From Octopus sinensis (lineage: Eukaryota), in the NCBI RefSeq assembly GCF_006345805.1, contig NC_043000.1, forward strand, positions 17,236,001 to 17,300,000: a stretch of 64,000 nt of DNA. Reading direction: 5' to 3'. The notes beneath the pieces were generated by a model. It did not search any database, had not been told where the DNA came from, and saw nothing but the letters and a program-made list of their open reading frames with translations. A program made the position numbers and the translations under genes. Shown here one piece after another: positions 3,105 through 18,049 of the stretch (positions are counted from its first letter, which is position 1; each line of letters opens with the position of its first letter).

Positions 3105-3802
3105 GGACGGACGGACGGACGGACGGACGGACGGACGGACGGATACTGTATTTAATGTGGTAATTCGAAATTAATTTTAATCCATTGTTGCAATATCCCT
3201 AACAACTGAAGATGTTAAGTCATTAGCATTAAGGAAAGATGCTCTTTAAAAGAGCAAATACTAAACCTCAAATTTCCTCAGACTAAAATTTCAATGTAAA
3301 TATGCAGAGTTAAGAGTCTATTCGTTGATAGCTACGATGACACCTTACAATATATTCCAGTCATCTTCGCGAAAGTATTGTCCAGTCATACATGTTATGA
3401 CCTCTGGAGTACTAACAGATATAGGGGTTTTTCTTTTTCTTTTTCTTTTATCCCAAAATAATTCTCTATTCAGGCAAATCAAACTAATTCTTTTCAAGTT
3501 GGTACCTATTTTAACGACCCGGAAAGGAGAAAAAGCAAAGTCGACCTCAGCAGAATTTGGACTCACAACGTAAAAACTAGAAGAAATGAGGCGAATCAAA
3601 AGAAAAACAGTGCAGAAGAATATCTATGAGTCATTCTAAAGACTTGATTATTTTGAGTTGACTATGATTCGCTGATTCAGTTTAAGACAACATAAACTAG
3701 TCGGGCGGTTACATGAGAGCTACCAAAGGTCAAACACATTCCTCTTCGTTGTTATTGCTTCGTTGTTATTAAATCTTTTTAATGTTGACTTATGCAATTC
3801 AA

Positions 3803-8676: not shown

Positions 8677-8962
8677 AAAGAACATCTTTTCCTCATTTCT
8701 GCATGCACAGACTCAAATAATTTCTCGCTCTCTAGTTCTCTCTCTCTCCTTCTTTCAAACACGGGCGAATGAAGAATGACAAAATCCTCATAACACTTTA
8801 AATATAAGTTTAGGTTGACTAAAAAAAAAGCTTCTTCTGAAATATGGGAAGTAAAAACTGCGAGAAAAACGAATTTATGTAAGTGAATAAGATCTCACTT
8901 GACTAAGGTACCACGCAGTAACGTGGCAATTGGGACCTTGTAATTATGAAATGATCAGTTGT

Positions 8963-9385
<423 letters not shown>

Positions 9386-9717
9386 TCTATTTATATGTGT
9401 GTATATGTATACACATACAGAGAGAAAGAGAAGGGGGAGAGAGGGAGAGAGAGAGAAATACAGGTATGTCAAATACCGTACAACAAAAATTCTTGATTTA
9501 TCAAAATTATCTCCGCCTCTAGATGATGTAATATAATTGCCTAATGTTAATTATGATCCGGTCCACTTGAGAAGAGGCGATAATCTAAATACTCAAGAAT
9601 TTCTCCAAAGCTGACTAGCCATAAAGGAAAGAAATAGGCTTATTGTCTGGGGATAAGAGAACAGTTGTTGACACGTGTTTCTGGCTGTCTTCAGGGCACA
9701 GAACAGTATACCGTATA

Positions 9718-9801
<84 letters not shown>

Positions 9802-10048
9802 CTTCGAAACGTAGAGTAGATGAAACCATGGCGACTGAAGAAGGGGTTTCTTCTTTGTGTTAATTGTCCTGTACTCTATTTTTTTGTTGTTTAAAAAAAT
9901 GTCCAGTTCCTTGGGTTTGTGTCTATGTTTTCGTTTCTCATTGTGTTCGACGTCTTTTTGGTGTCCTGTACTCACATATGCGTGTATATATACATGTAGA
10001 GGTAGGTACGTACATATATGTTTATATATATGCATATGTTTTATTTAT

Positions 10049-10128
<80 letters not shown>

Positions 10129-10201
10129 TGTATGTATGTATGTATGTATGTATGTGTGTGTGTATTAATAAATGTATTCATATATATTGATACATATATA
10201 T

Positions 10202-10304
<103 letters not shown>

Positions 10305-10949
10305 TACTTATGTGTGTATTTACAAATGCATAGATATATATGCATATATGCAGCGCATAACACACACACACACTCAACATGCACACACACACATACATTT
10401 TCCACCATCTTTTTTCCTCTCCATTCTTATTTTCTTGACATTATTCGAAAAGTACATTGCAATTGGGGATTGCTAGTCACCCTTTTCAACGTATATTTGT
10501 ATCTTCCCTCCGATAAAAATATGAACTATTGCTTTAATACTATTAGCAAATTTAAAAGATATGTGAACTTAAATAAAATATCAATGTGTTTCGAATTACA
10601 TTTACGGCTGTATCACTATGATTTATTACACTTTTAATGTGCAATTCCAACCAGATCGATAAACTTACCAAACTAGTACAACTCTAAAATCTGTGAAATA
10701 CATGTTCACCATATCATTTACACCAAAACGACATAACTCTTAAGTATCAACTGATGCTCCTATTAATACTAATGCTAACGATTTTCTTTATGCGGATAGC
10801 ATGTTCTCCGAAGGTTTCTGTTTTATTTCTGTTTTTTTTTCTCTTTTTTTTTTTTTTCTTTTTCCTGCAGCATAACTTTTGGAAAGTCTCTGCTTTGAAT
10901 ATGTTAACACCAATTTAACTATATTTCAATTTATTATTATTATATTATT

Positions 10950-11129
10950 GGGGGGCAAAGGAAAGTGATTGCGTCTCTCATAGCCTCTCCTCTCCAGGTG
11001 TAATGATCGCTGCAGAACTTCTACCTGGCTGCGCCTTGCGGAAAGTTCTTGCTTGTGGCCTCTCCTGCACTACTGTGTCCACAGCAGCACCTTCACGCGG
11101 TACCCCCTGTTCTCACTGAGCCTGCTGTG
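10950..11129 (+). ncRNA. HDV/CPEB3-like self-cleaving ribozyme candidate (no P4, long J1/2)
   Basis: P1 GGGGGGC 10950-56 / ACCCCCT 11102-08; P2 CACAGCAG 11080-87 / CTGCTGTG 11122-29; P3 ACC 11089-91 / GGT 11099-101; L3 TTCACGC; GT 11109-10; J4/2 CTGA 11116-19. Confidence 0.75.
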
Positions 11130-11670
11130 TGGCGCGACCGGGTGCTTGGCGGTATAACCAGGTGGGCAGACTGGGCTCGTTAGCCTTGGTTGGCAGCCAG
11201 TCTAGGAGAAGGAAAACTCTGACTCCAAACCCTCGCTCCGCTGCCTTGCGGATGCTCTTGGGATAGGGAAAGGCTATGGGAGTAAACCCAGACAGAAAAT
11301 CTGGAGTGGAGCCCCGAAGGCGGTAGGGTGTCGAATCTCGACCCTTTTCCGGCAACTCCTGCAGCCAACCAGACTCCAAATGTACTGCACTGCATTCCTT
11401 TGAATTATGTCTGGGGGGCCGAGAGGGAGATTCTGGTGTCTGGGCAGCCCAGTGTCTTCGTTCCTACCGCCCAGGCTTGCGCCATGGAGAAACTACTTCA
11501 TCGATGGAACAAGCTGAGATGGCAGTTACGAGTTTTAAGCAAGAGTGAATTGGCGTAATCCCGGTGGGAGGGATCATTGAAGTCCCACTGGTCAGCTACC
11601 GCCCGCCTTAAGCTGGGCAGCCCCCGGCCAATAATGGTGCTGACCCGCCACAGACTGCCCGCTTCAATGG

Positions 11671-14600
11671 GTGCTTGGAGCTAGGACAAAATCTGAAAAG
11701 CAGACTGAAAACCCTGCACCAGCAAACAAAGGAAAAACAAATACCCAGTCACCAGTCTTGCGACTGGCCACCTGGAATGTCAGGACCATGTGCCCTGGCA
11801 TCATTGACGATCTACGACAGATGAACGACAGTAGGAAGACAGCAGTCATCAACACCGAATTGAAAAGGCTGAACATCGACATAGCGGCGCTGCAAGAGAC
11901 CAGGCTCGCCGCAGACGGCATGCTACGGGAGAAGGACTACACCTTCTACTGGCAGGGGAGACCCGTCGAGGAGGCCCGCCAGCATGGCGTGGGGTTTGCC
12001 GTGAGGAACAGCTTGCTCCCCATGGCGATCCCTCCTTCAAATGGCTCAGAGCGCATCCTCACTCTTGGCCTTGCAACATCAACGGGGAAGGTAAACATAA
12101 TTAGTGCTTATGCCCCAACACTCCACTCTCCTCAGGAAATAAAAGACCGGTTCTATGAGGAGCTCGACGCCACCATCAGCCAGATACCAGGGTCGGAGCC
12201 CATCTTCCTTCTGGGCGACTTCAACGCAAGGGTGGGATCCGATCATGGGGCATAGCCAGATTGCCTTGGACGCTTTGGCGTGGGGAAGATGAATGAGAAT
12301 GGCCAGAGATTGTTGGATCTTTGCTCTTACCGGAAACTCTGCGTTACCAACACATTCTTCGTGACTAAGCCACAACACCAGGTCTCATGGAGGCACCCAA
12401 GGTCCGGATACTGGCACCAACTGGACATGGTCATCACCCGGCGAGCCCACCTCGGCAGTGTGCTTCTCACACGCAGCTACCATGGTGCTGACTGTGATAC
12501 AGACCACTCTCTGGTGTGCAGCAGGGTCCGATTGGCCCCAAAGAAAATCCGCCGTCCCGTAGGGAAAAGCCGCCCACGCATCAACACCGCCAGGACATCA
12601 TCAACCGCATGGAGGAAGCCCTTAAAGATCACGCAGCCACGTCCATCGAGGAGAGATGGCAGCTTATTCGCGACACCACTTGCAGAATAGCCATGTCATC
12701 CCTAGGAAAGAGGGAGCGGAGAAATCAAGACTGCACCTGCCTGAGATGGAGCCTGTCATTGCTGCCAAGAGGGAAGCACTGGTCAACTATAAGCGCGACC
12801 CATCAGAAAAGAACCTGGCTACTCTGAGAACAGCCAGAAGCGACGCCCAGAGGACGGTCAGACGTTGCGCCAACATCTACTGGCAGAACTTATGCCAGAA
12901 CATCCAGTGCTGTGCTGACAGTGGTAACGTGAAAGGGATGTACGAGGGGATGAAGAAAGCATTCGGGCCCACTGTCAGCAAGGTTGCTCCACTGAAGTCC
13001 AGGGATGGCGAGGTCATCAGGGACCAAGCGAAGCAGATGGAGAGGTGGGTCGAGCATTACCAGAACCTCTACTCCACTGAGAATGTGGTCACCAGGTCTG
13101 CCCTCGCCGGCATTCCTGCTCTGCCTGTCATGGAGGAGCTTGACCTGCCTCCAACAAAGGAAGAACTGAGCAAAGCAATTGACTCACTCGCTCGGGGCAA
13201 GGCACCAGGGCAAGACGGCATCCCCGCAGAAGTCATCCAGTGCGGGAAGCCAGCCCTTCTGGGCCATCTCCACGAGCTGCTCTGTCAGTGCTGGGAGGAG
13301 GGCTCTGTCCCTAAGGATATGCGTGACGCAAACATCATCACACTGTATAAAAACAAAGGGGACAGAAGCGACTGTAATAATTACAGGGGCATATCACTGC
13401 TCAGCACTGTCGGTAAGGCATTTGCCAGGGTGGTCCTGAAGAGGTTGCAAATGCTTGCAGAGCGTGTGTACCCCGAGTCTCAGTCTGGCTTTAGGGCAGA
13501 GAGGTCTACAATCGACATGATCTTCTCACTCAGGCAGCTTCAAGAAAAGAGTCGAGAACAGAGACAGCCCCTATACGTGGCCTTCATCGACCTGGCTAAG
13601 GCGTTCGACTCAGTCAGCAGGGGCTATTTGCGCTCCTGGGTAGGATAGGTTGCCCTCCCAGACTGCTGAAACTCATCATCTCCTTTCACGACGGTATGCA
13701 GGGAACAGTGCATTTTGACGGATCGCCCTCGGAGTCGTTCCCCATCCAGAGTGGAGTGAAACAGGGTTGCGTTCTGGCGCCAACGCTCTTCGGAATTTTC
13801 TTCTCCCTTGTCCTGTCCTATGCCTTCAGAACGTCCGACGACGGAGTGTTCCTCCACACCAGGGCTGATGGTGGATTGTTCAATCTTGTGCGCCTCAGAG
13901 CTAAGACCAAAGTCCGTCAGGTGCTGATCAGAGAGATCCTCTTTTCTGACGATGCCGCCCTAACATCACACAACCAGCCGGGTCTCCAGAGGCTGGTCAG
14001 CTCCCTGGCGGATGCCTGCCAAGAGTTCGGCCTTACCATCGGCCTGAAAAAGACAGAGATCATGGGCCAGGACGTCGGAGGGGTCCCCAGCATCAGTGTC
14101 GGCGACCACAGCTTGCAGGTGGTGAACGAGTTCACTTACCTGGGATCGACGGTCTCCAGCAGCCTGTCCCTCGAGCCGGAGCTGAACAGACGGATTGGGA
14201 AGGCTGCTGCTGCCATGGCTAAGCTCTCCAGGAGAGTGTGGGAAAACAACATGCTCACAATAACCACCAAGATCGCAGTGTACCGAGCCTGCGTGCTGAG
14301 CACCCTACTCTACGGCAGCGAGATCTGGACAGCATACACCCGGCAAGAATGCCGCCTCAGCGGCTTCCACATGCAGTGTCTTCGACGGATCCTTGGCATC
14401 TCCTGGAAGGACCGAGTACCAAACGGAGTCATCCTAGAACAGACTAATATGCCAAGCATGCATGCCCTCCTCGTGCGGAGACGACTGCGCTGGCTCGGAC
14501 ACGTCTGCCGCATGCAGGACGGTCGCATGCCTAAAGACATCCTGGGAGGTAACAGCTGCTGACCGCTCTGCTTGGCGTCGGACAGTGAGGAAAGGCGTTT

Positions 14601-14776
14601 CCATGGCTGAGGAAAGGAGAGCACAGCTGTGGTCGGACAGGCGGGACAGGAGGAGGACAACTGCAGCAACACCCCACACGTACCCATCGATGTTCGTGTG
14701 CAGCAACTGTACCAGGGACTGCCTCTCTAGAATTGGACTGTTCAGTCACAGCAGACGCTGCTCATCATCAAAGTAG
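11671..14776 (+). pseudogene. RTE endonuclease-reverse transcriptase ORF with in-frame stop, frameshifts and internal deletions
   Basis: APE motifs LATWNVRTM, ALQETR, SAYAPT, GDFNARVG, DTDH; RT motifs YRGISLLS, QSGFRAERST, FIDLAKAFDSV, GVKQGCVLAP, LFSDD, YLGS; TAG at 12253-55; frame breaks near 12600, 12735, 13622; deletion near 14545. Confidence 0.93.
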
Positions 14777-14839
14777 GCCCCACCCTTGGCGCGACCCATT
14801 GTCTATCAAGACAGACGGGGAGAAGAGAAGAGAGAGAGA

Positions 14840-14875
<36 letters not shown>

Positions 14876-16790: not shown

Positions 16791-17066
16791 TTGTTGTATT
16801 TCGGGATAGTCATTTTTTTTCTTGCCAAATAAACACACGCACTGTATATTCGTTCTTCACTCGTTTATTACTGTTCTTATTTTAACTCATGTCCATTGTC
16901 TGGAAATATTTCGTCATATATCTATGACCTCTTCAGCAACACTCTCCGTCCTCCTGTGTGTTCCTGCTCTGTTTAGTCCATTCTAAGCAGTAATAAACGC
17001 GTGAAGAACGTATATATAGTACGTGAGTTTATTTGGCAAAAAAAATGACCATCCCGAAATATAACA

Positions 17067-17069
<3 letters not shown>
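16789..17069. repeat. About 85-bp imperfect inverted repeat enclosing a degenerate hammerhead motif (16898-16940, minus)
   Basis: Arms 16789-16875 and 16985-17069; the loop contains CTGAAGA-G-GTCATA-GATA-TATGAC-GAAA-TATT-TC on the minus strand. Confidence 0.7.
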
Positions 17070-17124
<55 letters not shown>

Positions 17125-17139
17125 GAGAGAGAGAGAGAT

Positions 17140-17172
<33 letters not shown>

Positions 17173-18049
17173 CATACATACATAATACATACATACATAC
17201 ATACATACATACATACATACATACATACATGCATGCATGCATGCATACATACATACATACATACATACATACATACATACATACATACATACATACATAC
17301 ATACATACATACATACATACATACATACATACATAGGAGTTTACTATATTCTGTTATGCTATGTAACTTATTCGCAAATTGTATAGCAGAAAACAATACA
17401 GTTAAAATACATTACAAATATATGCTTAAAATAAAAACAGTAAGAAAACATAGCTATAAAGATATAATTTTAAAATGGGTGATTGATAGATTCTGTGTGT
17501 AACAAGTAATAGAGTGGCTGGATAGGCAAAACAAGAGATCCTTGTACGGATGTCGTCAATGGCTTGTTTTTCATTTCTTCTTCAAACTGGTTTTATCATC
17601 CTTTGACTATACATATTCATTCACACACGCACATACACGTACACATGCAGACATACATATATATATATGCACACGCATATACTACAATTATAGTTCTCAG
17701 TCCATGGTTAAACGGTGTGGTATGCATATATATATATATATTGCGGTTTTAGCCGCTTCACCAGTTTCCCGTTCGCCTGTAAGATCGTAAAGTGTGAAAC
17801 TCCATTGATGTGTGAGTGTGTGTGTGTATGTGTGTGTGTTTGTGTATGTATGTATATATGTGAATGTGTGTGTGTGTATGTATATGTGTGTGTGTGCGTG
17901 TGTGTATGTGTGTGTATTTAACTACTTGCTTATTATACACAAGCACATTCATACAGGCATATACGAGCAGTAATATGCGCTTAGAGGCACACCCTCAGCA
18001 GCAGCAGCAGCAGCAGTAGCAGCGGCAGCAGCACTAGTAGTAGTAGCAG

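What the first reader, a model, noticed from the sequence alone, without database searches (positions are those of the whole stretch)
10950..11129. P4-less CPEB3/HDV-like ribozyme defining the 5' end of a full-length RTE element
Seen: a nested double pseudoknot can be drawn. P1 is G6C/ACCCCCT (G1.U wobble and terminal C.A mismatch), P2 is 8 bp, P3 is ACC/GGT, L3 is TTCACGC, then GT, then only TCTCA before J4/2 CTGA (CNRA with the putative catalytic C at 11116). The predicted cut site (10949/10950) coincides exactly with the junction between (ATT)n and the element. Known: HDV-like ribozymes process the 5' ends of R2, RTE and L1Tc transcripts; L3 and the one-pair P1.1 here closely resemble the CPEB3 ribozyme (L3 UUCACGU, recalled from memory). 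Inference: this combines a minimal P4-less core with a 120-nt J1/2 insert. I am not aware of this combination being described in a cephalopod RTE. One bulged C at the P2/P3 junction may be a mutation or a sequencing deletion in this copy.
Basis: partly seen in the sequence, partly recalled or inferred. Interest (0 to 1): 0.85.

Follow-up and report, generated by a model that had tools for sequence, protein, structure and literature searches.

The report
Self-cleaving ribozyme heading an octopus retrotransposon
The first 180 bases of an octopus RTE jumping gene fold into a hepatitis-delta-type self-cleaving RNA that lacks the usual P4 arm and would cut exactly at the element's first base; the fold is well supported by comparison with relatives, but it is a new example of a known trick, not a new kind of thing.

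Summary
The drawn structure is in the sequence at the stated coordinates. A purpose-written HDV-type descriptor hits it as the only GC-rich match in the window. About 0.07-0.1 comparable hits are expected per 64 kb.

Two diverged relatives from unknown animals (L007, L009) keep the same fold. With L009's uncertain P1 strand masked, 8 of 20 pairs show compensatory double changes, against 0-1 in slid controls. All three lineages have only a 5-7 nt pyrimidine-rich linker where P4 should be, and a C-N-G-A J4/2.

Four independent insertions start exactly at G1 of P1. Three are Octopus copies with different microsatellite flanks. The fourth is L007, where a 12-bp target-site duplication abuts G1.

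One correction: the "bulged C" (11088) pairs with G11120 and covaries with it. The real, conserved bulge is nt 11121.

The novelty claim is overstated. RTE 5' HDV-like ribozymes are known, silkmoth R2 ribozymes combine a very long J1/2 with no P4 and still cleave, and an abalone ribozyme has 5 nt in place of P4 (PMC3774820).

No Rfam model matches, and cleavage is untested. Verdict: a real, probably functional, new member of a known kind. This copy's ORF is broken.

The parts
10931..10949 (.). 5' flanking (ATT)n-type microsatellite. It is target DNA, not part of the element.
   Evidence: The same repeat type follows the 3' end (14840-14875). Sister copies L001 and L002 have (TA)n/(CATA)n on both sides instead.
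10950..14839 (+). RTE-type non-LTR retrotransposon. Its ends are complete but its coding capacity is broken.
   Evidence: Exo_endo_phos at 11671-12255 and RVT_1 at 12656-14562. The ORF is split by one in-frame stop and three frameshifts. It is 96% identical to two Octopus sinensis copies that start at the same base.
10950..10956 (+). P1 5' strand (GGGGGGC). The predicted scissile bond is 10949/10950.
   Evidence: Pairs with 11102-11108. L007 has GGGGGUC/GACCCCU: pair 6 changes G-C to U-A and pair 7 changes C.A to C-G.
10957..11079 (+). J1/2 insert of 123 nt, probably a folded peripheral domain.
   Evidence: It is partly conserved in L007 and L009. RNAalifold predicts a closing helix, 10997-11002 (GGUGUA) with 11066-11071 (UGCACU), kept in all three lineages, plus two inner compensatory pairs. 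Folding energy alone is not significant.
11080..11088 (+).
   Evidence: Five of its nine pairs show compensatory double changes.
11089..11091 (+). P3 5' strand (ACC).
   Evidence: L007 has GCG/CGC, so two of the three pairs are compensatory.
11092..11098 (+). L3 (UUCACGC). C11094 is the P1.1 partner. U11092 and G11097 correspond to the U20.G25 metal-site pair.
   Evidence: U1, C3 and C5 are invariant in the three lineages. The CPEB3 positions U20, C22, A23 and G25 come from PMC4836649.
11099..11101 (+). P3 3' strand (GGU).
11102..11108 (+). P1 3' strand (ACCCCCU).
11109..11110 (+). J1/4, forming P1.1: G11109-C11094 plus U11110.U11093.
   Evidence: G-C is invariant. In L009 the second pair becomes a Watson-Crick U-A (L3 UACACGU).
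11111..11115 (+). 5-nt linker (UCUCA) in place of P4.
   Evidence: L007 has UUUCCA and L009 has UUUUUCG. No stem of normal size exists in any lineage.
11116..11119 (+). J4/2 (CUGA), with the putative catalytic C11116.
   Evidence: CUGA, CCGA and CUGA in the three lineages: C, G and A are invariant.
11120..11129 (+). P2 3' strand (G-c-CUGCUGUG). C11121 is a conserved single-nucleotide bulge.
11133..11160 (+). Strongly conserved block immediately 3' of the ribozyme (GCGACCGGGTGCYTGGCGGTAKAAC). Its role is unknown.
   Evidence: Nearly identical in octopus, L007 and L009.
14840..14875 (.). (ATT)12 directly after the element's GA-rich 3' end. It matches the 5' flank, so it is a microsatellite target or duplication.

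Best explanation
Bases 10950-11129 encode an HDV-like (nested double-pseudoknot) self-cleaving ribozyme that forms the 5' end of an RTE-type non-LTR retrotransposon of Octopus.

Inferred mechanism. The element is transcribed as part of a longer read-through transcript. P1 (G1.U wobble), P2, P3 and a one-and-a-half-pair P1.1 then assemble. C11116 in J4/2, helped by a Mg2+ held by the L3 U.G pair, catalyses attack of the 2'-OH of nt 10949 on the 10949/10950 phosphate. This releases element RNA that begins with a 5'-OH G1. Reverse transcription of that RNA to its end gives copies that all start at G1.

The P4 arm is replaced by a 5-7 nt linker. The 123-nt J1/2 insert is probably a folded peripheral domain that holds P1 and P2 together.

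Shown: the fold, its conservation and covariation, and the coincidence of the cut site with four insertion boundaries. Inferred: catalysis, the co-transcription route, and the role of J1/2.
For: 1. Every helix is present at the stated coordinates. A descriptor scan finds it as the only + strand hit in 64 kb, against about 0.07-0.1 expected for P2 of at least 8 bp.
2. The same descriptor independently hit the 5' end of a 72%-identical relative, L007. L009, found through a conserved UTR block, has the same core.
3. Covariation: 9 of 20 pairs have changes on both sides (8 of 20 with L009's P1 masked), against 0-1 in every slid control and 0/500 shuffles. 94% of cells are paired.
4. The putative catalytic C and the G and A of CNGA are invariant. 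So are the G-C of P1.1 and U1/C3/C5 of L3.
5. Three octopus copies with different flanks ((ATT)n, (TA)n, (TA)n) start at the same G. In L007 a 12-bp target-site duplication, ATATATAGGCCT, abuts G1.
6. Precedent: RTE elements carry 5' HDV-like ribozymes. P4-less, long-J1/2 R2 ribozymes cleave 10-40% in vitro, lose activity on C-to-U, and need part of J1/2 (PMC3774820). J1/2 peripheral helices speed up large HDV-like ribozymes about 1000-fold (PMC4908430).
7. RNAalifold finds a conserved closing helix in J1/2.
Against: - No Rfam HDV-type family (HDV, CPEB3, drz-Agam) matches, even at E<=10 on a 401-nt slice.
- No cleavage data exist.
- Only three independent lineages were obtained. Nine other related loci share the 5' UTR only from element position 214-348 onward, lack it, or are cut short, and none has the ribozyme.
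- L007 has A instead of G at L3 position 6, the G25 equivalent.
- L009's best P1 5' strand starts with A, has an A.C mismatch, and is no better than chance (my estimate: about 0.8 expected in 60 nt).
- P1 in the octopus copies has a C.A mismatch, and P2 has a bulge one pair from the active site.
- MFE folding is not better than shuffles.
- A competing 3-bp hairpin (11112-11114 with 11118-11120) can also be drawn in all three lineages.
Confidence: 0.78

Rival explanations
1. The region is a conserved, HDV-shaped structured 5' RNA module that no longer cleaves, or never did. It would serve instead as a binding site for the element's protein or as a translation-initiation structure. The 5' end would be set by transcription initiation at G1.
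For: Covariation proves structure, not catalysis. L007 lacks the L3 G and L009 has A at +1. There is no P4 and no Rfam hit. The block just 3' of the fold and UTR positions 215-420 are strongly conserved across phyla, which suggests further RNA functions.
Against: The residues that matter only for catalysis are kept: the G.U at the cut site in octopus and L007, the invariant C and G-A of J4/2, and the L3 U...G in octopus and L009. The boundary of four insertions falls exactly at the base a ribozyme would leave. P4-less, long-J1/2 versions do cleave in silkmoth R2.
Confidence: 0.12
2. It is a ribozyme, but in a different register. A vestigial 3-bp P4 (C11112-G11120, U11113-A11119, C11114-G11118, loop ACU) forms, C11121 is the catalytic C, and C11088 is a true bulge at the P2/P3 junction.
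For: Read directly from the sequences, the hairpin can be drawn in all three lineages: CUC/GAG in octopus, UUC/GAA in L007 and UUC/GAG in L009. The outer pair changes C-G to U-A to U.G.
Against: J4/2 would then be a single nucleotide with no purines after the C, too short to cross P3 in the known HDV-type architecture (general knowledge of the fold). Nucleotide 11121 is U in L009. C-N-G-A is invariant, as expected for J4/2. The C11088-G11120 pair covaries equally well. A 3-bp stem with a 3-nt loop is thermodynamically marginal.
Confidence: 0.06
3. It is a chance match to a permissive motif at a GC-rich 5' end.
For: The descriptor is loose: J1/2 up to 200 nt, P4 region 0-80 nt, spacers allowed. 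It yields 0.4-0.7 hits per 64 kb in random sequence.
Against: The start coincides exactly with the element's first base. An independent descriptor hit falls at the homologous site in L007. Eight to nine pairs are compensatory, against 0-1 in controls.
Confidence: 0.03

Closest known systems
HDV-like ribozymes at the 5' ends of non-LTR retrotransposons (RTE, R2, R4, L1Tc; Ruminski et al. 2011 as cited in PMC3774820)
   Same: Nested double pseudoknot at the first bases of the element. The cut is at the 5' junction, so full-length copies start at +1. The cleavage site is a G.U wobble and the catalytic C lies in J4/2.
   Different: The host is a cephalopod and the RTE lineage is different. P4 is missing. 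No Rfam drz or HDV model recognises it. I could not read the Ruminski paper, so I cannot say how close the mosquito RTE ribozymes are in sequence.
Silkmoth R2 ribozymes (Bombyx, Samia and others; PMC3774820)
   Same: They combine a very long J1/2 with no P4 stem. They are active in vitro, and part of J1/2 is required for that activity. Around L4 and J4/2 only the catalytic C and one A are conserved.
   Different: They belong to the R2 clade and sit in 28S rDNA, and they cut 28 nt upstream, inside the rRNA. Their J1/2 is 216-498 nt, against 123 nt here. There is no sequence relationship.
Abalone (Haliotis discus) HDV-like ribozyme with 5 nt instead of P4 (Webb & Luptak 2011, as cited in PMC3774820)
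   Same: It is also from a mollusc, and it also has exactly a 5-nt replacement of P4.
   Different: Its sequence and genomic context were not available to me. It may or may not belong to the same RTE family.
Mammalian CPEB3 ribozyme (Rfam RF00622)
   Same: L3 has U, C, A and G at the positions of U20, C22, A23 and G25. P1.1 is one G-C plus one U.U. J4/2 is 4 nt (PMC4836649). From memory only: a G-rich P1 with a C.A top pair in the human allele, and a CAGCAG/CUGCUG core in P2.
   Different: CPEB3 is intronic in a mammalian gene, has a P4 hairpin and has a 1-nt J1/2. The Rfam CPEB3 model does not hit the window. This is not a member of that family.
Large HDV-like ribozymes with a J1/2 peripheral domain (drz-Agam-2-1; PMC4908430)
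   Same: They have a long J1/2 whose helix pinches P1 and P2 together. A conserved closing helix is also predicted here.
   Different: drz-Agam-2-1 has a P4. The J1/2 helix here rests on three lineages only and leaves about 40 nt on its 5' side unaccounted for.

Membership tests
HDV-like self-cleaving ribozymes | Nested double pseudoknot: P1 and P2 cross each other, with P3 and P1.1 nested inside | tested here: met
   It can be drawn at 10950-11129. 94% of cells are paired across the lineages, and 8-9 of 20 pairs are compensatory, against 0-1 in slid controls.
HDV-like self-cleaving ribozymes | Catalytic cytosine in J4/2, followed by purines (CNRA) | tested here: met
   CUGA, CCGA and CUGA in the three lineages; C, G and A are invariant. 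This is a sequence-level test only.
HDV-like self-cleaving ribozymes | G+1 in a G.U wobble closing P1 at the cleavage site | tested here: met
   G10950.U11108 in the window. The same holds in L001, L002 and L007. L009 is uncertain (A at +1).
HDV-like self-cleaving ribozymes | L3 U...G pair (the U20.G25 equivalents) that holds the active-site metal | tested here: inconclusive
   It is present in octopus (UUCACGC) and L009 (UACACGU), but the G is replaced by A in L007 (UUCUCAU).
HDV-like self-cleaving ribozymes | P4 helix | tested here: not met
   There is only a 5-7 nt linker in all three lineages. The literature treats P4 as dispensable: HDV mutants, silkmoth R2 and an abalone ribozyme lack it (PMC3774820). 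It is therefore a usual feature, not a defining one.
HDV-like self-cleaving ribozymes | Match to a curated covariance model (Rfam HDV, CPEB3, drz-Agam-1, drz-Agam-2-2, F. prausnitzii) | tested here: not met
   No hits at gathering score in the window. No HDV-type hit at E<=10 in 10850-11250. This is expected if the 123-nt insert and the missing P4 are penalised, but it is still a failed test.
HDV-like self-cleaving ribozymes | Mg2+-dependent site-specific self-scission giving 2',3'-cyclic phosphate and 5'-OH ends | not testable with these tools
   This needs in vitro transcription and a cleavage assay.
Retrotransposon 5'-processing ribozymes | The cut site coincides with the 5' boundary of full-length genomic copies | tested here: met
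   The window, L001 and L002 start at the same G with different flanks. In L007 a 12-bp TSD abuts G1.
CPEB3 ribozyme family (RF00622) | Recognised by the family model; P4 hairpin; short J1/2; intron of CPEB3 in mammals | tested here: not met
   There is no Rfam hit, no P4, a 123-nt J1/2, and a retrotransposon context. The resemblance is limited to L3, P1.1 and P1 (plus memory).
RTE clade of non-LTR retrotransposons | Single ORF with an N-terminal APE endonuclease plus RT; about 3-4 kb; no poly(A), with a 3' end in short repeats | tested here: met
   Exo_endo_phos plus RVT_1. The element is 3.9 kb and has a GA-rich 3' end followed by a microsatellite. The best named homologues are 'craniofacial development protein 2-like'; that this annotation marks RTE/BovB-derived APE sequences is my own knowledge. 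Phylogenetic placement was not done.

The most novel reading that the evidence does not exclude
The most novel reading that the evidence does not exclude has two parts.

1. This ribozyme plus 5'-UTR module is an ancient unit shared across phyla by marine RTE lineages. It is kept at about 72-76% nucleotide identity even where the adjacent endonuclease is only about 44% identical in protein.
2. Its CPEB3-type core (L3 UUCACG, a one-pair P1.1, a G-rich P1 with a C.A top, and CAGCAG in P2) reflects common descent. On that reading the mammalian CPEB3 ribozyme would be an exapted 5' end of an ancient RTE insertion.
Probability: 0.08. Interest if true: 0.65.

Novelty: new member of a known kind. Interest (0 to 1): 0.35.

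Why it matters
- It extends HDV-like 5'-processing ribozymes to a cephalopod RTE family. I found no paper linking HDV-like ribozymes to octopus.
- It adds a second, independent retrotransposon clade in which P4 is naturally absent while J1/2 is long. This supports the idea that a J1/2 peripheral domain can stand in for P4.
- It gives a compact natural scaffold for testing that idea.
- It gives annotators a marker for true 5' ends of this RTE family.
- It does not change the known picture of how such elements are processed.

Tried and rejected
- Rfam at gathering score over the whole window gave 0 hits. Rfam in E-value mode on 10850-11250 gave only noise: SBWMV pseudoknot, mir-422, SCARNA8 and an EIAV frameshift element, all E>3.
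- A self-BLAST showed no second copy in the window.
- Thermodynamic folding of J1/2 and of the whole 181 nt gave z-scores of +0.5, -0.5 and +1.3, so it is uninformative.
- Nine related loci fetched by protein look-up or DNA pattern gave no ribozyme:
  - L003 (Acanthaster), L005 (shark), L008, L010, L012 and L014 (amphioxus) share the UTR only from element position 214-348 onward.
  - L004 and L006 align only from about position 800.
  - L011 is truncated at position 1356.
  - L013 aligns only from about position 746 and has just 646 nt upstream of its APE ORF before the contig ends.
  - None matches the descriptor or model R1.
- The viral-contig scan and the first metagenome pattern (the block right after the ribozyme) found nothing.
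- L009's P1 5' strand (AAGGACC at 804-810) was chosen by complementarity and is no better than chance. I therefore masked it for the stricter count.
- A loose descriptor run produced hundreds of microsatellite artefacts and was discarded.
- I could not obtain the CPEB3 sequence or the Ruminski 2011, Webb 2009 or Webb & Luptak 2011 papers. The full CPEB3 comparison therefore rests partly on memory.

Full report
**What is there.**
- GGGGGGC (10950-10956) pairs with ACCCCCU (11102-11108): a G.U wobble at the first pair, five G-C pairs and a terminal C.A mismatch.
- CACAGCAG (11080-11087) pairs with CUGCUGUG (11122-11129).
- ACC (11089-11091) pairs with GGU (11099-11101) around the 7-nt loop UUCACGC.
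- GU follows P1, then UCUCA, then CUGA.
- J1/2 is 123 nt.
- The (ATT)n/element junction is 10949/10950.

**The host element.** It is an APE+RT, RTE-type non-LTR retrotransposon of 3.9 kb.
- Exo_endo_phos lies at 11671-12255 and RVT_1 at 12656-14562.
- The reading frame is broken by one in-frame stop and three frameshifts.
- The GA-rich 3' end at 14839 is followed by (ATT)12.
- The best homologues are Octopus sinensis 'craniofacial development protein 2-like' and RT proteins at 96-97% identity. The window is therefore from O. sinensis or a close relative.

**More than chance.** I wrote an HDV-type descriptor: a G.U-initiated P1, a 3-bp P3, a 7-nt L3 with C at position 3, G after P1, CNRA, P2 of at least 6 bp, J1/2 up to 200 nt, and 0-80 nt in place of P4.
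- It finds this site as the only + strand hit in the window. One weak AT-rich hit lies on the other strand.
- First-order Markov sequences give 0.4-0.7 hits per 64 kb, and 0.07-0.1 with P2 of at least 8 bp.
- None of this uses the fact that the hit begins on the exact first base of the element.

**Comparative evidence.** There is no second copy in the window.
- *Octopus copies.* Two O. sinensis loci (L001, L002) carry copies 96% identical. They begin at the same G after (TA)n-type flanks and have an identical ribozyme core.
- *L007.* I searched the protein database with an accidental 88-aa ORF that overlaps the 5' UTR on the minus strand. This led to L007, from an unidentified ENA assembly, whose 5' UTR is 72% identical. 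The descriptor hit L007 de novo at the homologous place: P1 GGGGGUC/GACCCCU, P3 GCG/CGC, L3 UUCUCAU, GU, linker UUUCCA, CCGA, P2 AUAGCAAU/A-c-UUGCUAU.
- *L009.* A scan of metagenome contigs with a conserved UTR block gave L009, a third lineage: P2 GCAACAGC/G-u-CUGUUGC, P3 ACC/GGU, L3 UACACGU, P1 3' strand GGUCCCU, GU, linker UUUUUCG, CUGA.
- *Pair counts.* On a J1/2-trimmed alignment, 94% of cells are paired and 9 of 20 pairs show changes on both sides. Partners slid by 1-3 columns give 0-1, and 0/500 shuffles reach the observed value. L009's P1 5' strand was chosen by me and is no better than chance, so I masked it. Eight of 20 pairs remain: one in P1, five in P2, two in P3.
- *Model search.* A covariance model of the core finds only these five sequences among 14 loci.

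**Corrections to the drawing.**
- C11088, called a bulge or possible error, is present in all octopus copies. It covaries with G11120 (C-G, U-A, C-G), so P2 is 9 bp and abuts both P3 and J4/2, as in canonical HDV-type folds.
- The real bulge is nt 11121 (C, C, U), conserved as a feature.
- The second P1.1 position is U.U in octopus and L007 and becomes U-A in L009.
- No lineage has a P4. The linker is 5, 6 or 7 pyrimidine-rich nucleotides.
- A competing 3-bp hairpin (11112-11114 with 11118-11120) can be drawn in all three lineages and cannot be excluded by covariation. It would leave a one-nucleotide J4/2, which I consider sterically implausible. C11116U against C11121U would decide.

**The 5' boundary.** Each octopus copy is flanked on both sides by the same microsatellite type, and that type differs between copies: (ATT)n in the window, (TA)n/(CATA)n in L001 and L002. 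The repeats are therefore target DNA, and the element proper starts at G1. In L007 a 12-bp target-site duplication, ATATATAGGCCT, directly abuts G1 at the 5' end and follows the 3' end. Four independent insertions in two lineages thus start at the predicted scissile bond.

**J1/2.**
- Energy-based folding is not significant.
- RNAalifold on the three lineages predicts a closing helix, GGUGUA (10997-11002) with UGCACU (11066-11071). It is kept through one-sided changes, and two inner pairs are compensatory.
- This fits the 'peripheral domain' that accelerates large HDV-like ribozymes (PMC4908430), and the finding that P4-less silkmoth R2 ribozymes need part of J1/2 (PMC3774820). With three lineages this is only suggestive.

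**What argues for caution.**
- No Rfam HDV-type model matches.
- L007 has A at the L3 position equivalent to G25, and L009 appears to have A at +1. Single genomic copies may be dead.
- Nine other related loci either share the 5' UTR only from position 214-348 onward, align still later, or are cut short by truncation or a contig end. The ribozyme head is therefore either often lost by 5' truncation or is a module of only part of the clade.
- Nothing here measures cleavage.

**Comparison with what is known.**
- HDV-like ribozymes at the 5' ends of RTE, R2, R4 and L1Tc are established (PMC3774820, citing Ruminski 2011).
- The supposedly new combination, a long J1/2 with no P4, is described for five silkmoth R2 ribozymes. 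They self-cleave 10-40% and are killed by C-to-U. An abalone HDV-like ribozyme has 5 nt in place of P4.
- The CPEB3 resemblance is real at the checked positions: U20, C22, A23, G25; P1.1 of G-C plus U.U; a 4-nt J4/2 (PMC4836649). The rest rests on memory, and the Rfam CPEB3 model does not match. This is resemblance, not membership.
- Searches for HDV-like ribozymes together with octopus or cephalopod returned nothing relevant.

**Verdict.** I put about 0.78 on a genuine HDV-like self-cleaving ribozyme for the family, and somewhat less for activity of this particular copy's sequence in vitro. It is a new member of a known kind, of moderate-to-low interest (0.35).

The most novel reading still open is a cross-phylum RTE ribozyme/UTR module related by descent to the CPEB3 ribozyme. 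I think that is unlikely (about 0.08), but it would be notable if true.

Noticed in passing
window 10931-10949 and 14840-14875; L001:5080-5139 and 9184-9200; L002:6540-6638 and 10690-10710: Each of the three octopus copies is bracketed on both sides by the same microsatellite type, and the type differs between copies: (ATT)n here, (TA)n/(CATA)n in the other two. This suggests that the RTE family inserts into microsatellites, or primes on them.
   Followed up: partly
window 11133-11160 and 11164-11370: The 5' UTR downstream of the ribozyme is conserved at 68-84% nucleotide identity in loci from Acanthaster, a shark (Heterodontus), amphioxus and unidentified marine assemblies. In L009 the UTR (76% nt) is far better kept than the adjacent endonuclease (44% aa). 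This points to an unexplained functional RNA region or to horizontal spread.
   Followed up: partly
window about 14543: The window copy lacks about 107 nt that both O. sinensis sister copies have at element position 3594. Together with one in-frame stop (12253-12255) and three frameshifts, this makes the copy non-autonomous.
   Followed up: partly
window 14788-14812: The 3' UTR holds a small conserved hairpin (CCCAUUGUCUAUCAAGACAGACGGGG; UGUCU/AGACA stem). It is also present in L001, L002 and, with changes, in L007. It is possibly the RT recognition stem typical of RTE 3' ends.
   Followed up: no
L007 5483-5513 (minus strand): L007 has a 31-nt self-complementary insertion (AGUGAG...CUCACU hairpin) immediately after P1 that is absent from the octopus element. 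J1/2 therefore tolerates an added stem at the P1 junction.
   Followed up: no
L009 785-812: The putative cut site in L009 lies inside a near-perfect palindrome (UAGGUCCUU CCUAUG AAGGACCUA). The upstream arm could compete with P1, as known upstream attenuator pairings do, or it may be coincidence.
   Followed up: no
window 10820-10870: A long polypyrimidine tract ending in ...ttcctgcag lies about 80 nt upstream of the element and looks like a 3' splice acceptor. If real, the element sits just inside an exon or transcribed region in the sense orientation, which would supply the read-through transcript.
   Followed up: no
window 8930-9520, 9750-10300, 16970-17400: Extensive tetranucleotide and other microsatellite arrays (TCTA/TATC-type, TA, TGTA/CATA) produce long spurious ORFs such as 'SIYLSIYL...' and 'MYVCMYVC...'.
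   Followed up: no
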